Origin: Octopus sinensis
Lineage: Eukaryota
DNA: 12,542 nt
Direction of reading: 5' to 3'
Assembly (NCBI RefSeq): GCF_006345805.1
Contig: NW_021826565.1
Coordinates: forward strand, 1 to 12,542
Shown: piece after piece, positions 111 to 12,542 of the stretch
How positions within the stretch are numbered: the first letter of the stretch is position 1
How the letters are laid out: the number at the start of each line of letters is the position of its first letter
Notes under the pieces: generated by a model
What the model saw: only the letters and a program-made list of their open reading frames with translations
The model's database searches: none
Told to the model about the DNA's origin: nothing
Made by a program: the position numbers and the translations under genes

Positions 111-684
111 TGTTTCTTTATTAGCCACACAGGGCTGTACACAGATAGAACAAATTACAAGGTAGAGCTTTTCTTTTGAAGGTTTAAAAAAAAAAGGAGG
201 GGGGAGTTTCGATCAAAAGGGATCGTAAAAGGAGAGAAAGAGGACAAAAAAAGGGGGGTTAAAAAAAAAAGGGGGAGAGGAAAAAAAAATGATCAATAGG
301 GATCGTTATCACAGAAATGTCAATATGAAGTGTAAAGGGGAGGACAGGTGAGGTTTACCCGTGGAAAGAAAAGCCTACGGAAAAGACACGGTAACCTCGG
401 TCAATGGAGTCACATGTTATATTTCTTTTTTTTTTTTTTGCGAATAAGCAACTCTCTGTTTTCAATTTCTGGGTTCATAGGATCATGCTCAAGGTGGCTT
501 CGTCATTCATACGTGCCATTCTTGCTACATTCACCCATCTTTTTTTAAAACATTCGCTAGACAAAACTTGCCTCTCTACTCTCACTTTCCTTTTCAAGTG
601 GTACTTGAAGAAGTTGATGAGAGATTGACCAGAGAGGAAAGTGTTTGTCTCCAATCCTTTCAGACGCGTCCACCAGATACATTT
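111..684 (-). mobile_element. 5'-truncated Tx1/L1-clade LINE, copy B (ORF2 C-terminus plus 3' UTR)
   Basis: Minus strand 684-475 encodes KCIWWTRLKG...MNDEATLSMIL*, with 49/69 aa identical to the ORF2 end of copy A (1082-1291). It is followed by a pyrimidine-rich 3' UTR and AATAAA at 122-117, with GATA repeats on both sides. Confidence 0.85.
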
Positions 685-816: not shown

Positions 817-1081
817 CATTTATTAAACCACGCAGTGCCAAACACGGCGGGGGCCATAAAAGGTAGAATTTTTCTTTTCAAAACCGATCAATAGGGATCG
901 AAAAAGTTTTGGGACATGTAGACAAATAGATAACAAGGTAACGTTTTAACAAGAGCAATTCCCAAAAGGGGGAGAAATATAACACTGACTAGGTTTATCT
1001 GTGGAAAAAAAAACCTAGGAAGATAAAACCACGGTAACCTTGGAAAAAACATAAGAGCATAGCGCCCTTTCTCTTTTGGAT

Positions 1082-2130
1082 TTATAGGTTTATGCTCAAA
1101 GTGCATCTGTCATTCATGCGTACCATCTTTGCTACATTCACCCATCTTTTATTAAATCTTCCATTAGACAAAACTTCCCTCTCTACTCTTATCTTCATTT
1201 TCAAATAATACTTGAAAAAGTTCATTAGAGGTTGGCCAGAGAGAAAAGTATTTGTCCCTACACCTTTCAAACGCGTCCACCTTACACATTTTTCCGCCAT
1301 AGCCACCAGTACGATGAAAACTGACTGGCCTTTCCGGTTAAAGGAAGGTGGCGGAGTAATACTTACGATAGACTCTGCTGACAAACGGATTTGTCCCACA
1401 CGTGGCAGCAGCCATTCAATTAGGCCCACAGCTCTGAAATATTTGGACACTGCACAAGTGCATGCAGAACGGTTTCATCGTTCTGACCGCATATCGGACA
1501 GGTCGCCTTGGTGTTTCTTAAACCGTATCTCTACACCTAATCTCGAATGGGCGATGATCACTGATAGCACTGCCAGGTCAGGGATCTCTAGAAATTGTCC
1601 ATAGGTCCTGGCCCGAAAGTGGTCTTCAAGAGGCAAATCAGTTATTCCTTGTCGACGCCCAGAGTCACCCCAAGAACGTCATCGCACATCTCCTCCAGTA
1701 ATCCTCTACAGAACGCCTAGGCGGAATTGAAATCACAAAAGTTTGAGCCCAGGTGACAGAGCTGCTCGTGAGCATGGCGACATTCGCCCAGCCTCGGTCT
1801 CTGCTAGATCCATGATTGCATTTCGGTCAATGAAACGAGCTGCGGAAAAGCGCGTCTCACAAACGCGGACCACACCTGTACACTATGTTCGTCTATGAAA
1901 TGCTGGAGACGTCGCAGACTCAGCGCATCACTGCGCATCATCAACTACGGCATATCCAGCCCTCCATTTAGCGTATGTTCACAGCAAATGGATCGCCAAA
2001 ACCTTCGGAACGCTTTCCCTCCACAAAAATCGGAAGAGTATGTTTTCGAGTTTCGTGATGGTAGGATCGAGACAAGGCACGACGGTCAGACGGTTGTAGA
2101 TGACGGATGTGATGTGCACATTCGCCGCCT
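1082..2130 (-). pseudogene. LINE ORF2 C-terminal remnant (post-RT thumb region and zf-RVT-like zinc finger)
   Basis: Hand translation gives EAANVHITSVIYNRLTVVPC...KLENILFRFLW, then RRSICCEHTLNGGLDMP after a frameshift, and CPICGQNDETVLHALVQC at 1500-1447. These motifs are typical of L1/Tx1 ORF2. Several stops and frameshifts are present. Confidence 0.85.
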
Positions 2131-2459
2131 CTGAGATGTCATTGTGAGATCTGATAAATTGCATCAGGTCCAAATTGTTCGTATTGATTGTAGTTAGCAT
2201 TATGGGGCCACTTGGCGTTTGTGTATTCGTAGTGTTGGTGCTGGTATTCTTACTCTGTGAGGGAATTGTGTTATTGGGAGTAGTGTAATTCCCTGCTTTG
2301 TTTCATGAAGTGATCATTCTTTTTTCCCCCTTTTTGTCTTCTCCTCACTGTGGTCATTTGCTATTGTTCTGTGTCGCCTTCATCAGACGACATGTCGGAG
2401 GAATCAGAATATGAGAGAGGAAGAGTATTGGTGTCGATTTGTGTGCGTGGTAATGTTGA

Positions 2460-2493
<34 letters not shown>

Positions 2494-3556
2494 AGTGCTT
2501 GTTGGTGGCAGTTGGGATGTGATGAATAGATTGTTGAAGATGAGGAGTTAGTCGTTTCCTTCTTTTCTGAGTTTGGTGCTTCTGTAGCTGTTGTTGTCGA
2601 TGGTGATGATGATGGTGTTACTTCTACTGTCGATGTTAAATCTGCTGATGGTAGTGTTGATTGGTTGGGTTGGTTGAGTTGTTTGGAGAGGTTAGTTTCT
2701 GCAGTTAGATGGTGGAGCTGTTTCATCTGTTGTTGCTGCTGTAGTTGTGCTGATGGCGGTATGGGTAACAGTACTGGTTTGCTGTTGGTTTTTTTTCTTT
2801 TTGTTGTTGTTTTTGTTCTATTCGTTGTTGTTGCTCTTGTTGTTGTTGTGTCTGTTTGGCAGTCGACATTGAGGTGGTTTTTGCAACCACAAAGGGGACA
2901 ACGTGGCCTTCTGCCTTCAACGGCGAAATGTAGGTTTGTGTCATCCGGCAGTTTTACTAAGTGAGGGACAGGTTCAATCATCTCTTGATCCGCTTGGATT
3001 AAGTGCTCGAACCCCTGTCCAACCCAGTTTTGCTGCCACAGGATGGCAATTTCTAGCATATTAATTGCCTCTTTGAAATCAGTGCAGATGGCTGACACTA
3101 GCAATTGTATTTCTATCTCAGAGTACATCTTTAATTTATATTTTCATCACACGACGACCAAGATATGTAGGAATCATGATGATTTCCCCATATTAAAGTG
3201 GTGTTTTGGAATGTTCTTTTGCTTGTTCCTCTGTATCAAACATTGCTTCGATAGTGCCAAATCTTTTGCCCTTTGTAATATATTTTTCAAATATATTACA
3301 AAGGCCATATAGGCCTTAAGGACTTCTCCACCGTTGCTGAGTGGCATATTCCGGTCTTCTTGATTTTGTGCTTAGTGTTTTGTAAATTATGTTTTTTTTC
3401 TTTTAAATGTCCTGTAAAATGTCTTTTTGGCGTGTTTAATTTTATGGTTCTTTCTTCTTTGGTTAAAATTGACTTGTATTCTAATAATTCTTGTCTAAAA
3501 GGAGACGAGTCGTATCCTTTGCCTCGAACAAAAGCAAATTTGTTTTGTTTGTTCAT
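2131..3556 (-). pseudogene. LINE ORF1 (gag-like) remnant with RRM-like segment and CCHC zinc knuckle
   Basis: CPLCGCKNHLNVDC (C-X2-C-X4-H-X4-C) at 2900-2859 lies in the 255-aa ORF. An upstream frame reads KRFGTIEAMFDTEEQAKEH...IPTYLGRRVMKI. The C-terminus is T/Q/S-rich and low complexity. Stops and frameshifts interrupt it; possible ATG at 3556. Confidence 0.75.
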
Positions 3557-3971: not shown

Positions 3972-4057
<86 letters not shown>

Positions 4058-4062
4058 CAGAC

Positions 4063-4127
<65 letters not shown>
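3972..4127. repeat. (GATA)n microsatellite
   Basis: About 39 tetranucleotide units with two GACA variants. Confidence 0.98.
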
Positions 4128-4128
<1 letters not shown>

Positions 4129-4410
4129 GGGCCAAGGGAGAAATTGGCCCCTAGGGGCAGTTTCAACCCTAATTAAATTGTATATATTTTTCTTCTCAAC
4201 ATTAAAAATTTGGAGAAATTTTATTGTCGAATGCTGGTCAAATTCTTTCATGGACCAGCATTTCCGTAGCCTTGAAACGCTAGGAGAAAAAAAAAGATCT
4301 CCTGCACGTGCACCTATTCTAATAGAACAGACATGAGCAGGAAGACATCAAAGACAAACCTGAGTGACGTGGAAGTGAACGCTGCAACTACTTTCGTTAA
4401 CAGCCCTGTC

Positions 4411-4431
4411 ACCACCACCACCACCACCACC

Positions 4432-4463
<32 letters not shown>

Positions 4464-4491
4464 CAAGGTTACCATTGCTACCACCACCACC

Positions 4492-4523
<32 letters not shown>

Positions 4524-4537
4524 CAACAACAACAACG
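4411..4537. repeat. Two (ACC)n(AAC)n compound trinucleotide blocks
   Basis: Two ACC-run/AAC-run blocks separated by AAGGTTACCATTGCT. Confidence 0.95.
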
Positions 4538-4676
4538 ATATCATCGTTTTGCCGTCTACCATAACTGCCAACAACAACACCACTACTACAACCTCAACTA
4601 CTACAACTGACGCCCCTGCCACCAACACTACCACCAAAAACAAATCAAATTTTGCGCAGTACTGCAGAAAGTCCAA

Positions 4677-5085
4677 GCCGGCGAGCTGGCAGAAACGTTA
4701 GCACCACCGGGCGAAATGCATAGCGGTATTTCGTCTGTCTTTACGTTCTGAGTTCAAATTCCGCCGAGGTCGACTTTGCCTTTCATCCTTTCGGGGTCGA
4801 TAAATTAAGTACCAGTTACGCACTGGGGTCGATGTAATCGACTTAATACCTATGTCTGTCCTTGTTTGTCCGCTCTGTGTTTAGCCCCTTTTGGGATAAT
4901 AAAGAAATAGGTATTTCGTCTGTCTTTACGTTCTGAGTTCAAATTCCGCCGGGGTCGACTTTACCTTTCATCCTTTCGGGGTCAATAGATTAAGCATTAG
5001 TTGCGTACTGGGGTCGATCTAATCGAGTATCCCCACAAAAAAAAAAAAATTGGAGCCTTGTATCTAGAGTAGAAAGTAATACTGC
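4677..5085 (+). mobile_element. tRNA-derived SINE, two-unit form (one head, two B-box/core units)
   Basis: A-box-like TGGCAGAAACGTTAG near 4688 and B box GAGTTCAAATTCC near 4750. Core GGTCGACTTTGCCTTTCATCCTTTCGGGGTCGATAAATTAAGTACCAG resembles, from memory, Meta/MESC-type SINE cores. The unit from 4725 repeats at 4910 (185-bp period); the second unit has a different tail. Confidence 0.85.
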
Positions 5086-5212
5086 AACAAGTCCGGTTTA
5101 ATATATTCTTCGCTAAACGATCGAACAAAGCCGTGCTGAGTTGTTTCCGTAATACTATAATTTTTAAAATAATATCAGTAATTGGTTATTATTACTTTCG
5201 TCTCACTGCATA

Positions 5213-5638
5213 CTCTCTTTTACTCTTTTACTCTTTTACTTGTTTCAGTCATTTGACTGCGGCCATGCTGGAGCACCGCCTTTAGTCGAGCAACTCGACC
5301 CCGGGACTTATTCTTTTTTTGTAAGCCCAGTACTTATTCTATCGGTCTCTTTTTGCCGAACCGCTAAGTGACGGGGACGTAAACACACCAGCATCGGTTG
5401 TCAAGCAATGCTAGGGGGACAAACATAGACACACAAACAAACACACATACATATATATATATACATACATATATGCGACAGGCTTCTTTCAGTTTCCGTC
5501 TACAAAATCCACTCACAAGGCTTTGGTCGGCCCGAGGCTATAGCAGAAGATACTTGCCCAAGGTACCATGTAGTGGGACTAAACCCGGAACCATGTGGTT
5601 GGTAAGCAAGTTACTTACCACACAGCCACTCCTGCGCC
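5213..5638 (-). mobile_element. Composite tRNA-derived SINE (tRNA head + CORE-like domain + internal microsatellite + second core + tail with (GTAAAAGA)3)
   Basis: Minus strand begins GGCGCAGGAGTGGCTGTGTGGTAAG (A box), then a degenerate B box GGTTTAGTCCC and ACCTTGGGCAAGT (CORE/MIR-like). A TA/TG microsatellite lies at about 5425-5472, followed by a 3' module ending TGACTGAAACAAG and three 8-bp repeats at 5238-5215. Confidence 0.85.
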
Positions 5639-5715
5639 TATGCATGATTATTTTTATTTACATTTTTAAAGTTTCTTGCTTTTTTTTTTTCTTTTTTGAG
5701 GTTTCTTTTATGTTT

Positions 5716-5939
5716 AGCTGGCAGAATCGTTAGCACACCGGACAAAATACTTAGTGGCATTTCGTTCGTCTTCACGTTCTGAGTTTTCAAATCCCACCGA
5801 GGTTAACTTTGTCTTTTATCCTTTCAGAGACGATAAAATATGTATCAGCTGAGAACTGGGGGGTCAATGTAATTGACTTACTCCCTCGCCCTAAATTGCT
5901 GGCCTTGTGCCAAAATTTGAAATCAATATCATTATTATT
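5716..5939 (+). mobile_element. tRNA-derived SINE, diverged monomer of the family at 4677
   Basis: AGCTGGCAGAATCGTTAGCA head, degenerate B box and core, tail AAATTGCTGGCCTTGTGCCAAAATTTGAAATC and an (ATT)n end. Confidence 0.85.
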
Positions 5940-6069
5940 GTGGTTGATCATCTGTGAAATTTGAAGCATACTCAGAAGGAAATACCTTGAGGTGTTACAT
6001 CAAGAGTGTCATAAAAGCCTTACTGAATCAGATAAGAATATCTGGTAAAGACGTGATAGATATTTTGCA

Positions 6070-8765: not shown

Positions 8766-8798
8766 CTTTATCAACTCATCAATTTCCATATATTAATA

Positions 8799-9309
8799 CT
8801 AGCAGTATCGCCCGGCGTTGCTCGGATTTGTAAGGGAAATAACTATATAAGCATTTTTAGTGAGTTACTTCCCTTATAGATGCCAATTCGGGCTTTCTTA
8901 GCCATTTCTGTTTTAGTGTCTTCAAGCCATGAAGTCGTTGTTCTAAAAGAACGCTGGTCTCCTTGACAACGCTTTACGACGTTGATATCCTTACACTCCC
9001 TTCCCCACAGCTTCACAAGGGAGGGAAGAAGGGGGAGAAGCAAACAGGTGCAGGTGTGACCATGGACGCCAACTCCGCCGCCATCGACACACGAAAAAAT
9101 ATGCATTAAAATGGAATAAAAAATTATGTTAAATTATTTTTTAAATCGTAGACTCATCGTAGACGCGCGCTAATAGCCAGACGGGCTCGATATGAATCAC
9201 GACCATAAGATACCCGAATTTGGTTAAACTGCACCGCAAAATGTGGGAGTAGTTAGGAATCTAAATCGAAGGGGACAGACACTCACACAACTACAGTTTT
9301 ATATATTAA
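8799..9309 (-). mobile_element. Non-autonomous Helitron, first of a head-to-tail pair (5' TC missing)
   Basis: CTAG 3' end at 8799 with a subterminal hairpin; about 21 differences from 9310-9826 by eye (about 96% identical). Confidence 0.88.
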
Positions 9310-9826
9310 CTAGCAGTATCGCCCGGCGTTGCTCGGGTTTGTAAGGGAAATAACTATATAAGCATTTTTAGTGAGTTACTTCCCTTATAGATGCCAATTC
9401 GGGCTTGCTTAGCCATTTTTGTTTTGGTGTCTTCAAGCCATGAAGTCGTTGTTCTAAAAGAACGCTGGTTTCCTTGACAACGCATTACGACGTTGATTTC
9501 TTTACACTCCCTTCCCCACAGCTTCACGAGGGAGGGAAGAAGGGGGAGAAGCAAACACAGGTGCAGGTGTTTGAGCGTGGACGCCAACTCCGCCGCCATC
9601 GACACACGAAAAATTATGCATTAAAATGGAATAAAAAATGATGTTAAATTATTTTTAAAATCGTAGACTCATCGTAGACGCGCGCTAATACTCAGACGGG
9701 CTCGATATGAATCACGACTATAAGATACCCGAATTTGGTTAAACTGCACCGCAAAATGTGGGAGGAGTTAGGAATCTAAATCGAAGGGGACAGACACTCA
9801 CACAACTAGAGTTTTATATATATAGA
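9310..9826 (-). mobile_element. Non-autonomous Helitron, complete, second of the pair
   Basis: 5' TCTATATATATAAAAC at 9826, hairpin CCCGAGCAACGCCGGG, 3' CTAG at 9310, A|T flanks. Confidence 0.9.
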
Positions 9827-9941
9827 TATATTACACATAGCAGCTTAGTTAAAATCTCCCATACTCGAGTCATATTTTCTGTTTTTTATCAGGTTTACTT
9901 TTTAAAACTTCACAAAGAAATAACTTCCCCGAATAGGCATT

Positions 9942-10580
9942 GGTTTCAAATCTTAGCACTAGCTCACAGGTTCGGTGGATGGGGCAAGGCGATTGAATCG
10001 ACCCCAGTGCTCAAATAGTTCTTATTTTTAAAAAAACCTAAAATTCAAAAGACTAAGTCGCCCTTGGCAGGATTTGGCCTCAAAACGTAAGGGCGGATGA
10101 AATGCCCATTTCTTTACTACCCACAAGGGGCTAAACACAGAGTGGCCAAACAAGGACAGACAAACGGATTAAGTCGATTACATCGACCCCAGTGCGTAAC
10201 TGGTACTTAATTTATCGACCCCGAAAGGATGAAAGGCAAAGTCGACCTCGGCGGAGTTTTAACTCAGAACGCAGCGGCGGACGAAATACCTATTTCTTTA
10301 CTACCCACAAGGGGCTAAACACAGAGCGGACAAACAAGGACAGACAAACGGATTAAGTCGACTACATCGGCCCCAGTGCGTAACTGGTACTTAATTTATC
10401 GACCCCGAAAGGATAAAAGGCAAAGTCGACCTCGGCGGAATTTGAACTCAGAACGCAGCGGCGGACGAAATACCGCCAAGCATTTCGCCCGGCGTTCTGA
10501 AACTTACTGCCAGCTGGCCGGATGAAATACCATTAAGTATTACGTTCGGTCTGCTAACGATTCTGCCAGCTTGCCACTCC
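9942..10580 (-). mobile_element. Nested SINE complex: young head plus two 184-bp units (about 10519-10107) inside an older diverged SINE (head 10580-10520, body 10106-9942)
   Basis: Two A-box heads in series on the minus strand, two near-identical B-box/core/tail units with a 184-bp period, then a highly diverged body ending in the TTTGAAACC-type tail. Confidence 0.85.
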
Positions 10581-10624
10581 GACCAAGGATGTATGTCACA
10601 ATTATGAGTAGAAGTTCCTCGACA

Positions 10625-10880
10625 TATTTTTTTTTATCCTTTTCAATCATTAGACTACGGCCATGCTGGGGCACCGCCTTCAAGAACATTTTAGTCGAAT
10701 GAATAGACACCAGTACTTAGTTTTCTGAAGCCTGGTACTTATTATATCGGTCTCTTTTTGCCGAACCCACTACGTTACAAAGATGTAAGCAAACCAAGGC
10801 CGGTTTTCAGGCAGTGGACAAGCGCGCAAGGGTGCACGGATGCAAACACGTACACACACAGACACACACACACACATATA
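10625..10880 (-). mobile_element. Diverged 3' module and microsatellite of the composite SINE family
   Basis: GGCCATGCTGGGGCACCGCCTT...GGTACTTATTATATCGGTCTCTTTTTGCCGAACC matches 5240-5365; a (CA)n tract lies at about 10850-10876. Confidence 0.8.
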
Positions 10881-10888
10881 TAAACAGA

Positions 10889-11286
10889 CTAGTAGTATCG
10901 CCCGCGTTGCTCGGGTTTGTAAGGGAAATAACTATATAAGCATTTTTAAAGAGTTATATCCAAAAAATAGCAAAAAATGCATTAAAATGGAAAAAAATGA
11001 TGGTAATTATTTTTTTAAATCGTTGACTCATCGTAGACATTTTTAGAGAGTTACTTCCCTTATATAATAGCGAAAAAATGCATTAAAATGGAAATAAATG
11101 ATGGTAAATTATTTTTAAAATCGTAGACTCATCGTAGACGCGCGCTAATACCCAGAAGGGCTCGATATGAATCACGACTATAAGATACCCGGTTTTGGTT
11201 AAACTGCACCGCAAAATGTGGGAGTAGTTAGGAATCTAAATCGTAGGAGACAGACACTCACACAACTTCACTTTTATATATAAAGA
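10889..11286 (-). mobile_element. Non-autonomous Helitron with an internal about 100-bp tandem duplication
   Basis: 5' TC at 11286, 3' CTAG at 10889, A|T flanks; shares its 5' about 190 bp with 9310-9826. Confidence 0.88.
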
Positions 11287-11578: not shown

Positions 11579-11647
<69 letters not shown>

Positions 11648-11849
11648 CACTACCACTACCACTACAACTAATACTACTACTACTACTACTACTTTGCTGC
11701 TGCTGCTGCTAATACTACTACTACTACTACTGCTGTTGCTGCTAATACTACTGCTACTACTACTGCTGTTGCTGCTAATACTACTACTACTGTTGCTGCT
11801 GCTGTTACTACTACTACTACCACTGCTGTTGTTGCTGCTGCTGCTGCTG

Positions 11850-11897
<48 letters not shown>

Positions 11898-11902
11898 TTA
11901 CT
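11571..11902. repeat. Compound (ACT)/(ACC)/(GCT)/(GTT) trinucleotide repeat
   Basis: Direct repeat with recurring higher-order blocks such as CTACTACTGCTGTTGCTGCTAATA. Confidence 0.97.
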
Positions 11903-12205
11903 ACGAAAATAGCAACTTCCTCATTTCATGCATTAAACTAAGAGCGCGCGTGCTTGAAAAGGTTGGTCGAAAGCGTTCACGGACAAGGAAAAAAAATCTT
12001 CCAAAAATAGTTAATGACATCTCGATATAAGATTTTTTGACTTTCCTTTAAAAAATCCCCTCCATACTTAAAGACTGTATTAAGTAACTTTATCATAAAA
12101 GTTTTCAAATATAATGTAATATTATAATCGCAGCGTGGAAGTTGTTTATAAGCCATTTAAGAAACACACAAAAACCGTTAGATTCACTTCAACATTTAAA
12201 TTCAA

Positions 12206-12295: not shown

Positions 12296-12484
12296 ATATA
12301 TATGTACGTATGTATGTGTGTGTGTATGTATATGTGTACGTATGTATGTAAGTACGTATGTGTGTATGTATGTATGTATGTATGTATGTATGTATGTATG
12401 TATGTATGCATGCATGCATGCATGCATGTATGTGTGTATGTATGTATGTATGTATGTATGTATGTATGTATGTATGTATGTATG

Positions 12485-12518
<34 letters not shown>

Positions 12519-12542
12519 TGTATGTATGTATGTATGTTGTAT
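12296..12542. repeat. (TATG)n microsatellite with TG and CATG variants
   Basis: Direct tandem repeat running to the window end. Confidence 0.97.

What the first reader, a model, noticed from the sequence alone, without database searches (positions are those of the whole stretch)
10095..10580. Candidate self-targeting SINE: a young copy inserted into an old family member with an apparent target-site duplication
Seen on the minus strand: old head (10580-10533), then TGGTATTTCATCC, a young head, two young units ending in the LINE-like tail, then TGGGCATTTCATCC and the old diverged body. The plus-strand 9-mer GGATGAAAT is exact at 10520-10528 and 10095-10103. Both carry the old element's TTTCAT variant, whereas the young units read TTTCGT, as expected for a TSD of about 9-13 bp. 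The insertion point is the same site as the other two junctions. Established: Tx1 endonucleases can be sequence-specific for other repeats (Xenopus Tx1L inserts into Tx1D). Inference: a SINE that borrowed a Tx1 tail is delivered site-specifically into its own abundant family, a safe-harbour strategy I do not know to be described for SINEs.
Basis: partly seen in the sequence, partly recalled or inferred. Interest (0 to 1): 0.82.

Follow-up and report, generated by a model that had tools for sequence, protein, structure and literature searches.

The report
SINE copies nested at one internal site
In this octopus-like repeat-rich window, a young SINE variant has landed at least twice at exactly the same nucleotide inside older copies of its own family, most likely because the last bases of its tail match a 7-base motif in every family member; this is a modest variation on known target-preferring SINEs, not a new kind of element.

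Summary
On the minus strand, 10580-9930 is an old SINE split at GGTATTTCATCC. That 12-mer is duplicated (11/12) on both sides of a 425-bp insert made of a young head and two 184-nt units that are 96% identical.

The same tail-to-GGTATTTCG junction occurs at 10291/10290, 10107/10106 and 4909/4910, so all 3 young tails in the window have it.

Repeated integration at one nucleotide of resident family members is well supported, with at least two independent events in different hosts. The Tx1 partner and a SINE-specific endonuclease have no evidence.

New evidence changes the mechanism. In O. vulgaris transcripts printed in a paper supplement, the same tail abuts non-SINE DNA at three loci. In two of these the tail still reads ...AAAGAAATAGGTATTT.

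So the tail end and the internal site share GGTATTT, and the junction is a 7-nt overlap. The site begins at the last loop base of a 12-bp head hairpin and runs along its 3' arm.

The best model is motif- or microhomology-guided target-primed reverse transcription. Resident SINEs are then the main reservoir of the motif.

No octopus genome data could be reached, so genome-wide enrichment is untested. A close precedent exists: the crocodilian SINE SINEU-3, mobilised by Tx1-Mar LINEs. I score this as a new variant of a known kind, of moderate interest.

The parts
10532..10580 (-). Head of an old resident SINE (C0). It resembles the head of copy B and ends in the loop of the head hairpin.
   Evidence: It is 87.5% identical to the head of B over 48 nt by BLAST, and 80% by global alignment.
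10520..10531 (-). Left copy of the target-site duplication, GGTATTTCATCC. It is followed directly by the 5' end of the young head.
10475..10519 (-). Complete head of the inserted young SINE (GGCCAGCTGGCAG...GCTTGGC). It carries the 5' arm of the 12-13 bp hairpin.
10291..10474 (-). Young unit 1: GGTATTTCG site, B-box-like GAGTTCAAATTCC, body, and LINE-like tail ending ...GGGTAGTAAAGAAATA.
10107..10290 (-). Young unit 2. It has no head, is 96.2% identical to unit 1, and starts at the same GGTATTTCG.
10095..10106 (-). Right copy of the target-site duplication, GGCATTTCATCC. It is also the start of the old body.
9930..10094 (-). Body and old-type tail (...GATTTGAAACCAATG) of the old resident SINE (C3). 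It is 64-70% identical to all other copies.
4660..4674 (+). 5' copy of the duplication that flanks the whole of locus A: TACTGCAGAAAGTCC.
   Evidence: 13/15 identical to 5080-5094.
4680..4724 (+). Head of locus A. It is only 78% identical to the young head at locus C, so it may be the head of the resident element.
4725..4909 (+). Unit A1 with the young tail (...GGGATAATAAAGAAATA). Its first 42 nt are identical to A2. Positions 43-121 are identical to unit 2 of locus C.
4910..5079 (+). Unit A2. It starts at GGTATTTCG directly after the young tail. Its body is 83-89% identical to the young units, and it has an old-type tail with an A-run.
5080..5094 (+). 3' copy of the duplication that flanks locus A: TACTGCAACAAGTCC.
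5716..5935 (+). Solitary old-type SINE (B). Its GGCATTTCG site at 5756 is unoccupied, so it serves as the reference for an uninterrupted element.
113..160 (-). A related LINE-like tail (...TGTGTGGCTAATAAAGAAACA) at the end of a different repeat (family X). It is followed by a (TATC)n-type microsatellite at 112-2, not by a SINE.
   Evidence: (78.6% over 42 nt, E=1e-5).

Best explanation
[quoted passage not shown] Every member of this SINE superfamily carries that heptamer once. It begins at the last loop base of a 12-bp hairpin in the head and runs along the hairpin's 3' arm.

**Why that site.** The 3' end of the element, ...AAAGAAATA(GGTATTT), overlaps the motif. Either the RNA 3' end pairs with the nicked target strand, or the partner enzyme prefers the motif. 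Either way the tail is joined in register to GGTATTTCG of a resident SINE. These SINEs are very abundant, so they probably supply a large share of all such sites in the genome. The result looks like 'self-targeting'.

**Two outcomes.**
- If the resident copy is diverged (locus C), the full cDNA is joined by its own 5' end. The result is two heads and a 12-nt target-site duplication.
- If the resident copy is similar (locus A, and perhaps unit 1 to unit 2 of locus C), the 5' side is resolved by homology, by truncation, or later by slippage between the two direct GGTATTTCG copies. The result is head-less 184-nt tandem units.

**Shown:** the anatomy, the duplication, the identical junction nucleotide in different hosts, and the tail-plus-GGTATTT association outside SINEs.

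**Inferred:** the pairing or nicking step, the order of events, the identity of the partner LINE, and the share of genomic GGTATTT sites that lie in SINEs. That share rests on my own estimate and was not measured.
For: - All 3 young tails in the window are followed in register by GG(T/C)ATTTC(G/A)TC and a full SINE body.
- Locus C is a split old element: head plus 12 nt upstream, the same 12 nt plus body downstream (11/12 identical), with a complete young head in between.
- The hosts differ. C3 is 64-70% identical to everything else in the window. A2 is 83-89% identical to the young units and carries the other tail. So at least two junctions arose independently.
- Locus A is not an in-place duplication. 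A1 positions 43-121 are 77/77 identical to unit 2 of locus C but only 66/77 identical to its neighbour A2. The first 42 nt of A1 are identical to A2. Among 20 informative sites, the first 7 are host-type and the next 13 young-type. The head of A is only 78% identical to the young head of C, against 93-94% for the bodies.
- Three O. vulgaris transcripts carry the same tail next to non-SINE sequence. Two read ...AAAGAAATAGGTATTT and then unrelated DNA. The third reads ...AAAGAAATA and then TATGTG.... BLAST confirms that similarity to the window SINEs stops after 20-22 nt.
- A related tail on another repeat family ends in (TATC)n and (TATG)n arrays. This points to a partner whose 3' end carries short GTAT/TATC-type repeats and primes by short pairing.
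- The site begins at the last loop base and runs along the 3' arm of a 12-bp hairpin.
- Tx1-clade elements favour particular repeats or microsatellites, and SINEs inherit that preference and form tandem copies.
Against: - The sample is six tail ends in all: three from one 12.5-kb window and three from assembled transcripts, whose contigs begin or end inside the tail.
- No genome-wide count, partner LINE or empty orthologous site could be obtained.
- GGTATTT after the tail at non-SINE loci could be part of the element. One possibility is a few bases carried over from a master copy that itself sits at this site. In that case it is not a target motif, and the data cannot separate the two readings.
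- The apparent 42-nt host-derived stretch in A1 rests on five clustered variable positions. At three of them (16, 17 and 19 from the start of the site) the old copies B and C3 agree with the locus A copies at one or more positions. So the two young units of locus C may simply be a derived sub-lineage, which weakens the mosaic argument.
- The unit 1 to unit 2 junction of locus C may have been inherited from a dimeric source and is not necessarily a separate event.
Confidence: 0.55

Rival explanations
1. Strand transfer during reverse transcription, or composite source elements. The element's RNA really ends in ...AAAUAGGUAUUU. While the enzyme copies one SINE RNA it reaches the internal GGUAUUUCG. 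The nascent cDNA end (AAATACC) then pairs with the 3' end of a second SINE RNA and copying continues there. Multi-unit elements (head-unit-unit) are thus made in one insertion event and can spread further as dimers or trimers.
For: - The 7-nt identity between the tail end and the internal site is exactly what such a jump needs.
- Locus A as a whole lies inside one 15-nt duplication with 13/15 identity, as expected for a single insertion primed from the old-type tail.
- Internal units lack heads.
- Units 1 and 2 of locus C are 96% identical and share sub-lineage variants.
Against: - It cannot explain locus C, where an old head plus 12 nt lies upstream of the young head and the same 12 nt starts the old body. 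That is the signature of insertion into DNA.
- For locus A it needs a second, homologous switch back to the first template to explain why the first 42 nt of A1 equal A2.
Confidence: 0.2
2. A sequence-specific endonuclease of a Tx1-clade LINE recognises an extended site in this SINE family and delivers the tail-bearing SINE almost only into its own relatives, as a safe harbour.
For: - All 3 junctions in the window are at the same nucleotide, and one has a clean target-site duplication.
- Tx1-clade LINEs with repeat-specific targets, and SINEs that follow them, are documented.
- L1-Tx1 elements are among the recently active LINEs of O. vulgaris.
Against: - The same tail lies next to non-SINE DNA at three transcript loci, so targeting is not exclusive.
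- What those loci share with the SINE site is only GGTATTT.
- The Tx1-borne SINEU elements end in poly(A), whereas this tail ends in AAAGAAATA plus GTAT/TATC-type repeats.
- The duplicated target stretch appears to vary (12 nt at C, possibly about 42 nt at A). SINEU-3, in contrast, is expected to have had the same 16-nt duplication in many cases.
- No LINE with this tail was seen.
Confidence: 0.12
3. Rearrangement at the DNA level only. Unequal crossing-over, replication slippage or gene conversion between SINE copies produced the tandem units, with no site-preferring retrotransposition.
For: Any insertion at this site leaves two direct GGTATTTCG copies 184 nt apart. Slippage between them would duplicate exactly one unit. 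The 96% identical units 1 and 2 of locus C could have arisen this way.
Against: - It does not create the first tail-to-site junction, the double head or the 12-nt duplication at locus C.
- At locus A the two neighbouring units carry different tails. A1 is identical over 77 nt to a copy at another locus and only 86% identical to its neighbour.
Confidence: 0.06
4. Chance. An ordinary nested insertion happened to fall at the same place as a junction already present in a composite SINE.
For: SINEs make up about 11-12% of the O. vulgaris genome, so nesting as such is common.
Against: Two hosts of different lineage are hit at the identical nucleotide, and the motif turns up again after the tail at two non-SINE loci. 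The chance of a given 7-mer at a fixed position is about 1 in 16,000 per site.
Confidence: 0.03

Closest known systems
SINEU-3 (and SINEU-1/2) of crocodilians, mobilised by Tx1-Mar LINEs (Kojima 2015, PMC4494074)
   Same: A SINE inherits a target preference from its partner and accumulates at one position of another abundant repeat. Tandem copies arise by repeated insertion at the regenerated target.
   Different: - There the target is a Mariner DNA transposon, not the SINE's own family.
- The tandem copies are full-length and sandwich a target-site duplication expected to have been the same 16-nt sequence in many cases.
- The elements end in poly(A), and the partner LINEs were identified.
- Here the target motif lies inside the SINE itself, the internal units lack heads, the tail is not poly(A), and the partner is unknown.
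Tx1L inserting into Tx1D in Xenopus, and the microsatellite- or gene-specific Tx1 relatives Keno, Kibi and Koshi (as summarised in PMC4494074)
   Same: Non-LTR retrotransposons that choose a repeated sequence as their landing site.
   Different: These are autonomous LINEs with demonstrated or strongly inferred endonuclease specificity. No LINE and no endonuclease were examined here, and clade membership is untested.
Alu insertions into the A-rich tails and linkers of resident Alu elements (from my own knowledge, not checked here)
   Same: A SINE family offers its partner's preferred short motif within its own sequence. New copies therefore often land in old ones, giving clusters and tandem pairs.
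   Different: The L1 motif is a loose T/A-rich site that pairs with poly(A). Here the overlap is a specific heptamer at one fixed position inside the promoter region, and the outcome includes head-less tandem units.
Chimeric L1 insertions in cell-culture assays, where the 5' end of the new cDNA is resolved by pairing with a resident L1 at the target (from my own knowledge, not checked here)
   Same: Homology between the incoming cDNA and a resident copy yields a seamless 5' junction. I propose this for locus A.
   Different: In those cases the resident copy is hit by chance. Here the 3' junction is itself at a fixed site in the resident copy.
SINEs and LINEs that end in short tandem repeats preceded by an AATAAA-like signal, such as UnaL2 and ZfL3 and many mollusc SINEs (PMC4758252)
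   Same: The tail family here ends in (A/G)TAAAGAAA(C/T)A followed by TATC, TATG or GTAT repeats.
   Different: The clade of the octopus partner is unknown, and no stem-loop requirement was tested.

Membership tests
Target-specific SINE carried by a target-specific LINE (SINEU-3 / Tx1-Mar type) | A large majority of copies sit at one defined position of one repeat family. | tested here: inconclusive
   All 3 tails in the window are at the SINE site. None of the 3 tails in transcript contigs is. The sample is tiny and biased, and no genome data could be reached.
Target-specific SINE carried by a target-specific LINE (SINEU-3 / Tx1-Mar type) | A partner LINE with the same 3' tail and the same target preference. 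| not testable with these tools
   There is no LINE in the window. A related tail occurs on a second non-autonomous repeat. Collection scans found nothing.
Target-specific SINE carried by a target-specific LINE (SINEU-3 / Tx1-Mar type) | A target-site duplication of constant sequence and length. | tested here: inconclusive
   There is one clear case, a 12-nt duplication starting at GGTATTT. A possible duplicated stretch of about 42 nt at locus A starts at the same base.
Tx1-clade tail | Sequence similarity of the SINE tail to the 3' end of a classified Tx1 LINE. | not tested
   No Tx1 sequence from octopus was available. The tail lacks the poly(A) seen in the Tx1-borne SINEU elements and is followed by GTAT/TATC-type repeats.
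tRNA-derived SINE | A head recognisable as a tRNA. | tested here: not met
   ARAGORN finds no tRNA. Rfam gives no tRNA match in the whole window at gathering score, and none in 4600-5950 (loci A and B) at E up to 10. Only A-box-like TGGCAGAATCG and B-box-like GAGTTCAAATTCC are seen by eye. The head folds with a 12-bp hairpin that is longer than an anticodon arm.
SINE (non-autonomous retroposon) in general | Dispersed copies with a defined 5' end, variable subfamily tails and flanking target-site duplications. | tested here: met
   There are seven head or unit copies at three loci on both strands. Two tail types are present. Locus A is flanked by a 13/15 duplication.
Satellite or in-place tandem duplication | Neighbouring units are each other's closest relatives and share the same ends. 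| tested here: not met
   At locus A the neighbours have different tails, and A1 is closest to a unit at locus C. For units 1 and 2 of locus C (96%) this origin stays possible.

The most novel reading that the evidence does not exclude
A SINE lineage whose integration site is built into its own promoter hairpin. Each new copy both uses and supplies the target. The family therefore grows by invading itself, re-uses the heads of resident copies, and builds head-less 184-nt tandem arrays. This would be a direct retrotransposition route from a dispersed SINE to a satellite-like repeat, possibly maintained because it spares genes.
Probability: 0.25. Interest if true: 0.6.

Novelty: new variant of a known kind. 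Interest (0 to 1): 0.45.

Why it matters
If a genome-wide census confirms it, this would be a natural case in which a few bases of overlap between a retroposon's 3' end and a motif inside its own family steer integration. That would explain three things in octopus genomes, where SINEs make up about a tenth of the DNA:
- why these SINEs cluster;
- how resident heads get re-used;
- how tandem arrays can be seeded from SINEs.

It would also give a simple handle for finding the partner LINE, which should have the same tail and the same GGTATTT junctions. It does not open a new class of mechanism. Target-preferring SINEs and microhomology-guided priming are both established.

Tried and rejected
**Attempts to reach more copies from octopus genomes. 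None reached a genome assembly.**
- A protein search with the 54-aa antisense ORF that spans the junction found no shared words.
- A search with the 255-aa ORF at 2361-3128 found no hits.
- Exact-pattern scans for the tail and for the SINE core gave 0 matches in the metagenome, prokaryote-genome and viral collections.
- I translated two O. vulgaris proteins from transcripts printed in a supplement and used them as a lure, so as to fetch octopus loci through the contig look-up. The best hit was only 56% identical and no cephalopod orthologue was listed. The protein collection apparently holds no octopus genomes, and I dropped this route.
- A full-text search for a 22-nt stretch of the SINE found nothing.
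- A first search of the supplement with 11-14-mers found nothing. Shorter words then recovered three tail ends.

**Ideas considered and set aside.**
- A reverse-transcription stop at a modified base equivalent to tRNA position 37. The units include two loop bases upstream of where such a stop would fall.
- The near-palindrome GAAATAGGTATTTC as a functional hairpin. The junction does not fold better than shuffled sequence (z about +0.5).
- A mismatch in age between the old head and the old body. They differ in identity to copy B (80% against 64%) but are equally far from the young copies (63-74% against about 70%). One split element remains the simplest reading.
- No target-site duplication was found around the old element of locus C or around copy B.

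Full report
**What the window is.** The 12.5-kb window is AT-rich and full of microsatellites and short retroposons. The repeat content matches what I know of octopus genomes. In addition, 20-22-nt stretches of the element studied here recur exactly in Octopus vulgaris transcripts. The species assignment remains an inference. ARAGORN and Rfam find no RNA gene.

**Checking the observation.** On the minus strand the region reads as follows:
- An old SINE head at 10580-10532.
- GGTATTTCATCC at 10531-10520.
- A complete second head at 10519-10475.
- Two 184-nt units at 10474-10291 and 10290-10107. Each runs from GGTATTTCG through a B-box-like GAGTTCAAATTCC to a tail ending GGGTAGTAAAGAAAT(A/G).
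- GGCATTTCATCC at 10106-10095.
- A decayed body with a different tail, down to about 9930.

The two units are 96.2% identical.

The head-plus-12-nt fragment and the 12-nt-plus-body fragment are complementary parts of one element with a 12-nt overlap. That is the signature of an insertion with a target-site duplication. The old head and old body are about equally distant from the young copies (63-74% and about 70%). I therefore see no reason to doubt that they belong together.

**The other junctions.** The same tail-to-GGTATTTCG junction lies between the two units of locus C and at 4909/4910 on the plus strand (locus A). Every young tail in the window, 3 of 3, is followed in register by a SINE body. 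A solitary old-type copy (B, 5716-5935) shows the uninterrupted arrangement.

**Locus A is informative.**
- There is no second head.
- The whole composite lies inside one 15-nt duplication with 13/15 identity.
- The two units have different tails.
- Counted from the site, the first 42 nt of A1 are identical to its neighbour A2. Positions 43-121 of A1 are 77/77 identical to unit 2 of locus C, but only 66/77 identical to A2.
- Of 20 informative positions, the first 7 are host-type and the remaining 13 young-type.
- The head of A is only 78% identical to the young head of C, although the bodies are 93-94% identical.

This rules out a simple in-place duplication. It fits a young cDNA that joined a resident SINE at the site, with the 5' side resolved by homology about 42 nt downstream.

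One caution applies. The host-type signal rests on five clustered positions. At three of them the old copies B and C3 agree with the locus A copies at one or more positions. So part of the pattern could be sub-lineage variation in the locus C units.

**Independent events.** The hosts at the junctions differ. C3 is an old copy, 64-70% identical to everything else. A2 is 83-89% identical to the young units and has the other tail. The third host is a young unit. At least two junctions must therefore have arisen separately at the same nucleotide. Random nesting cannot account for that.

**What the site is.** In young heads the site begins at the last loop base of a 12-bp hairpin and runs along its 3' arm: CGGGCGAAAUGC, a 6-nt loop, then GUAUUUCGUCUG. 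The tail-to-site junction itself does not fold better than shuffled sequence.

**Evidence from outside the window.** No octopus genome could be reached. Two protein searches with window ORFs found no homologues, and a third with octopus lure proteins returned no cephalopod orthologue. Five pattern scans found no match.

However, the supplement of PMC9115989 holds the first 400 kb of an O. vulgaris transcriptome as text. Word searches there recovered three contigs that begin or end in this tail:
- GGTAGTAAAGAAATAG-GTATTT-ATAGACTTCGG...
- TAATAAAGAAATAG-GTATTT-TGCACGTATG... (this one has the A1 tail variant)
- GGGTAGTAAAGAAATA-TATGTGCACATA...

BLAST against all SINE copies of the window shows that similarity ends after 20-22 nt. 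These are therefore non-SINE flanks.

Two conclusions follow. First, the element also lands outside SINEs. Second, GGTATTT follows the tail even there. The 'junction' is thus a 7-nt overlap between the element's 3' end and a motif found once in each SINE.

Inside the window, a related tail on another repeat (family X) is followed by (TATC)n and (TATG)n arrays. The tail family therefore normally ends in short GTAT/TATC-type repeats.

**Most likely mechanism.** The mechanism is target-primed reverse transcription, with priming guided by the heptamer. The guide could be pairing of an RNA end ...GGUAUUU with the nicked strand (AAATACC), or a nicking preference of the unknown partner.

These SINEs are very abundant; all SINEs together make up about 11.6% of the O. 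vulgaris genome. They would therefore hold a large share of all such motifs. That share is my estimate and was not measured. Family members then become frequent targets without any recognition of the SINE as such.

- A diverged target gives a full-length nested copy with a double head (locus C).
- A similar target gives a seamless head-less unit (locus A).
- Once two direct copies of the site lie 184 nt apart, slippage can add further units. This is possibly how units 1 and 2 of locus C arose.

I put this model at about 0.55.

**Rivals.**
- Strand transfer between SINE RNAs at the same 7-nt overlap, or spread of composite sources, explains locus A and the head-less units. It does not explain the split old element at locus C (0.2).
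The non-SINE insertions and the non-poly(A) tail weaken it (0.12).
- DNA-level rearrangement alone (0.06) and chance (0.03) are unlikely.

**Comparison with what is known.** Kojima (2015, PMC4494074) described crocodilian SINEU-3. About 90% of its copies lie in one Mariner family. It follows Tx1-Mar LINEs that have the same preference, and it forms tandem copies around the duplicated target. A SINE delivered to a specific site in an abundant repeat is therefore already on record.

What would be different here:
- The motif lies inside the SINE's own family, in fact inside its promoter region.
- Resident heads can be re-used.
- The result is head-less tandem units.

Membership in the Tx1-borne class cannot be claimed, because neither the partner nor the tail's clade was tested. 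The head is also not recognisable as a tRNA by ARAGORN or Rfam, although A- and B-box-like motifs are present.

**Verdict.** The finding is a new variant of a known kind, of moderate interest (0.45). It stays limited until a genome-wide census of tail junctions is done.

Noticed in passing
window 113-684 and 823-1291 (minus strand), with microsatellites 2-112 and 685-822: There are two copies (80% identical over 218 nt) of another non-autonomous repeat with a common 5' end (AAATGTRT..GGTGGACGCGT). They lie head-to-tail, and each is followed by a (TATC)n/(TATG)n array. Their 3' tails are related to the young SINE tail. The arrangement looks like successive insertions into a microsatellite.
   Followed up: partly
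window 5230-5645 (minus strand) and 10581-10880 (minus strand): Two copies of a second SINE family carry the CCTTGGGCAAGT core motif, consistent with the CORE-SINE type reported for octopus OR1/OR2. The second copy is 5'-truncated and abuts the old head of locus C.
   Followed up: no
window 8789-9821 and 10901-11281: A repeat of about 511-515 bp is present as two 95-96% identical tandem units. A third, more diverged partial unit lies on the far side of the SINE cluster. The whole cluster at 9822-10900 may therefore sit inside this array.
   Followed up: no
window 2361-3128 (minus strand): A 255-aa ORF has a C-x2-C-x4-H-x4-C-like motif (CPLCGCKNHLNVDC) and long threonine-rich, low-complexity stretches. 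It had no homologue in the protein search. It may be a decayed retroelement Gag-like remnant or may occur by chance.
   Followed up: partly
window 11580-11904, 3972-4128, 12297-12542, 4410-4536: There are very long microsatellites: (ACT)n with about 109 copies, (GATA)n with about 39, (TATG)n with about 62 running off the window end, and (CAC)n/(CAA)n directly upstream of locus A.
   Followed up: no
window 4886-4895 and 10411-10418: Two of the young-type units (A1 and C1) have each acquired a T4 run by point mutation: CCCCTTTTGGG in the A1 tail and CCTTTTATCC in unit 1 of locus C. The tail of the two locus C units has no run of four T. Polymerase III transcripts of intact copies would therefore read past the tail into whatever follows. 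This bears on how the RNA 3' end is defined.
   Followed up: no
protein collection (tool behaviour): Two O. vulgaris proteins found no cephalopod orthologue among 5.8 billion clusters; the best hit was 56% identical. Octopus genomes therefore seem to be absent from the searchable collections, which limits any test that needs related loci.
   Followed up: yes
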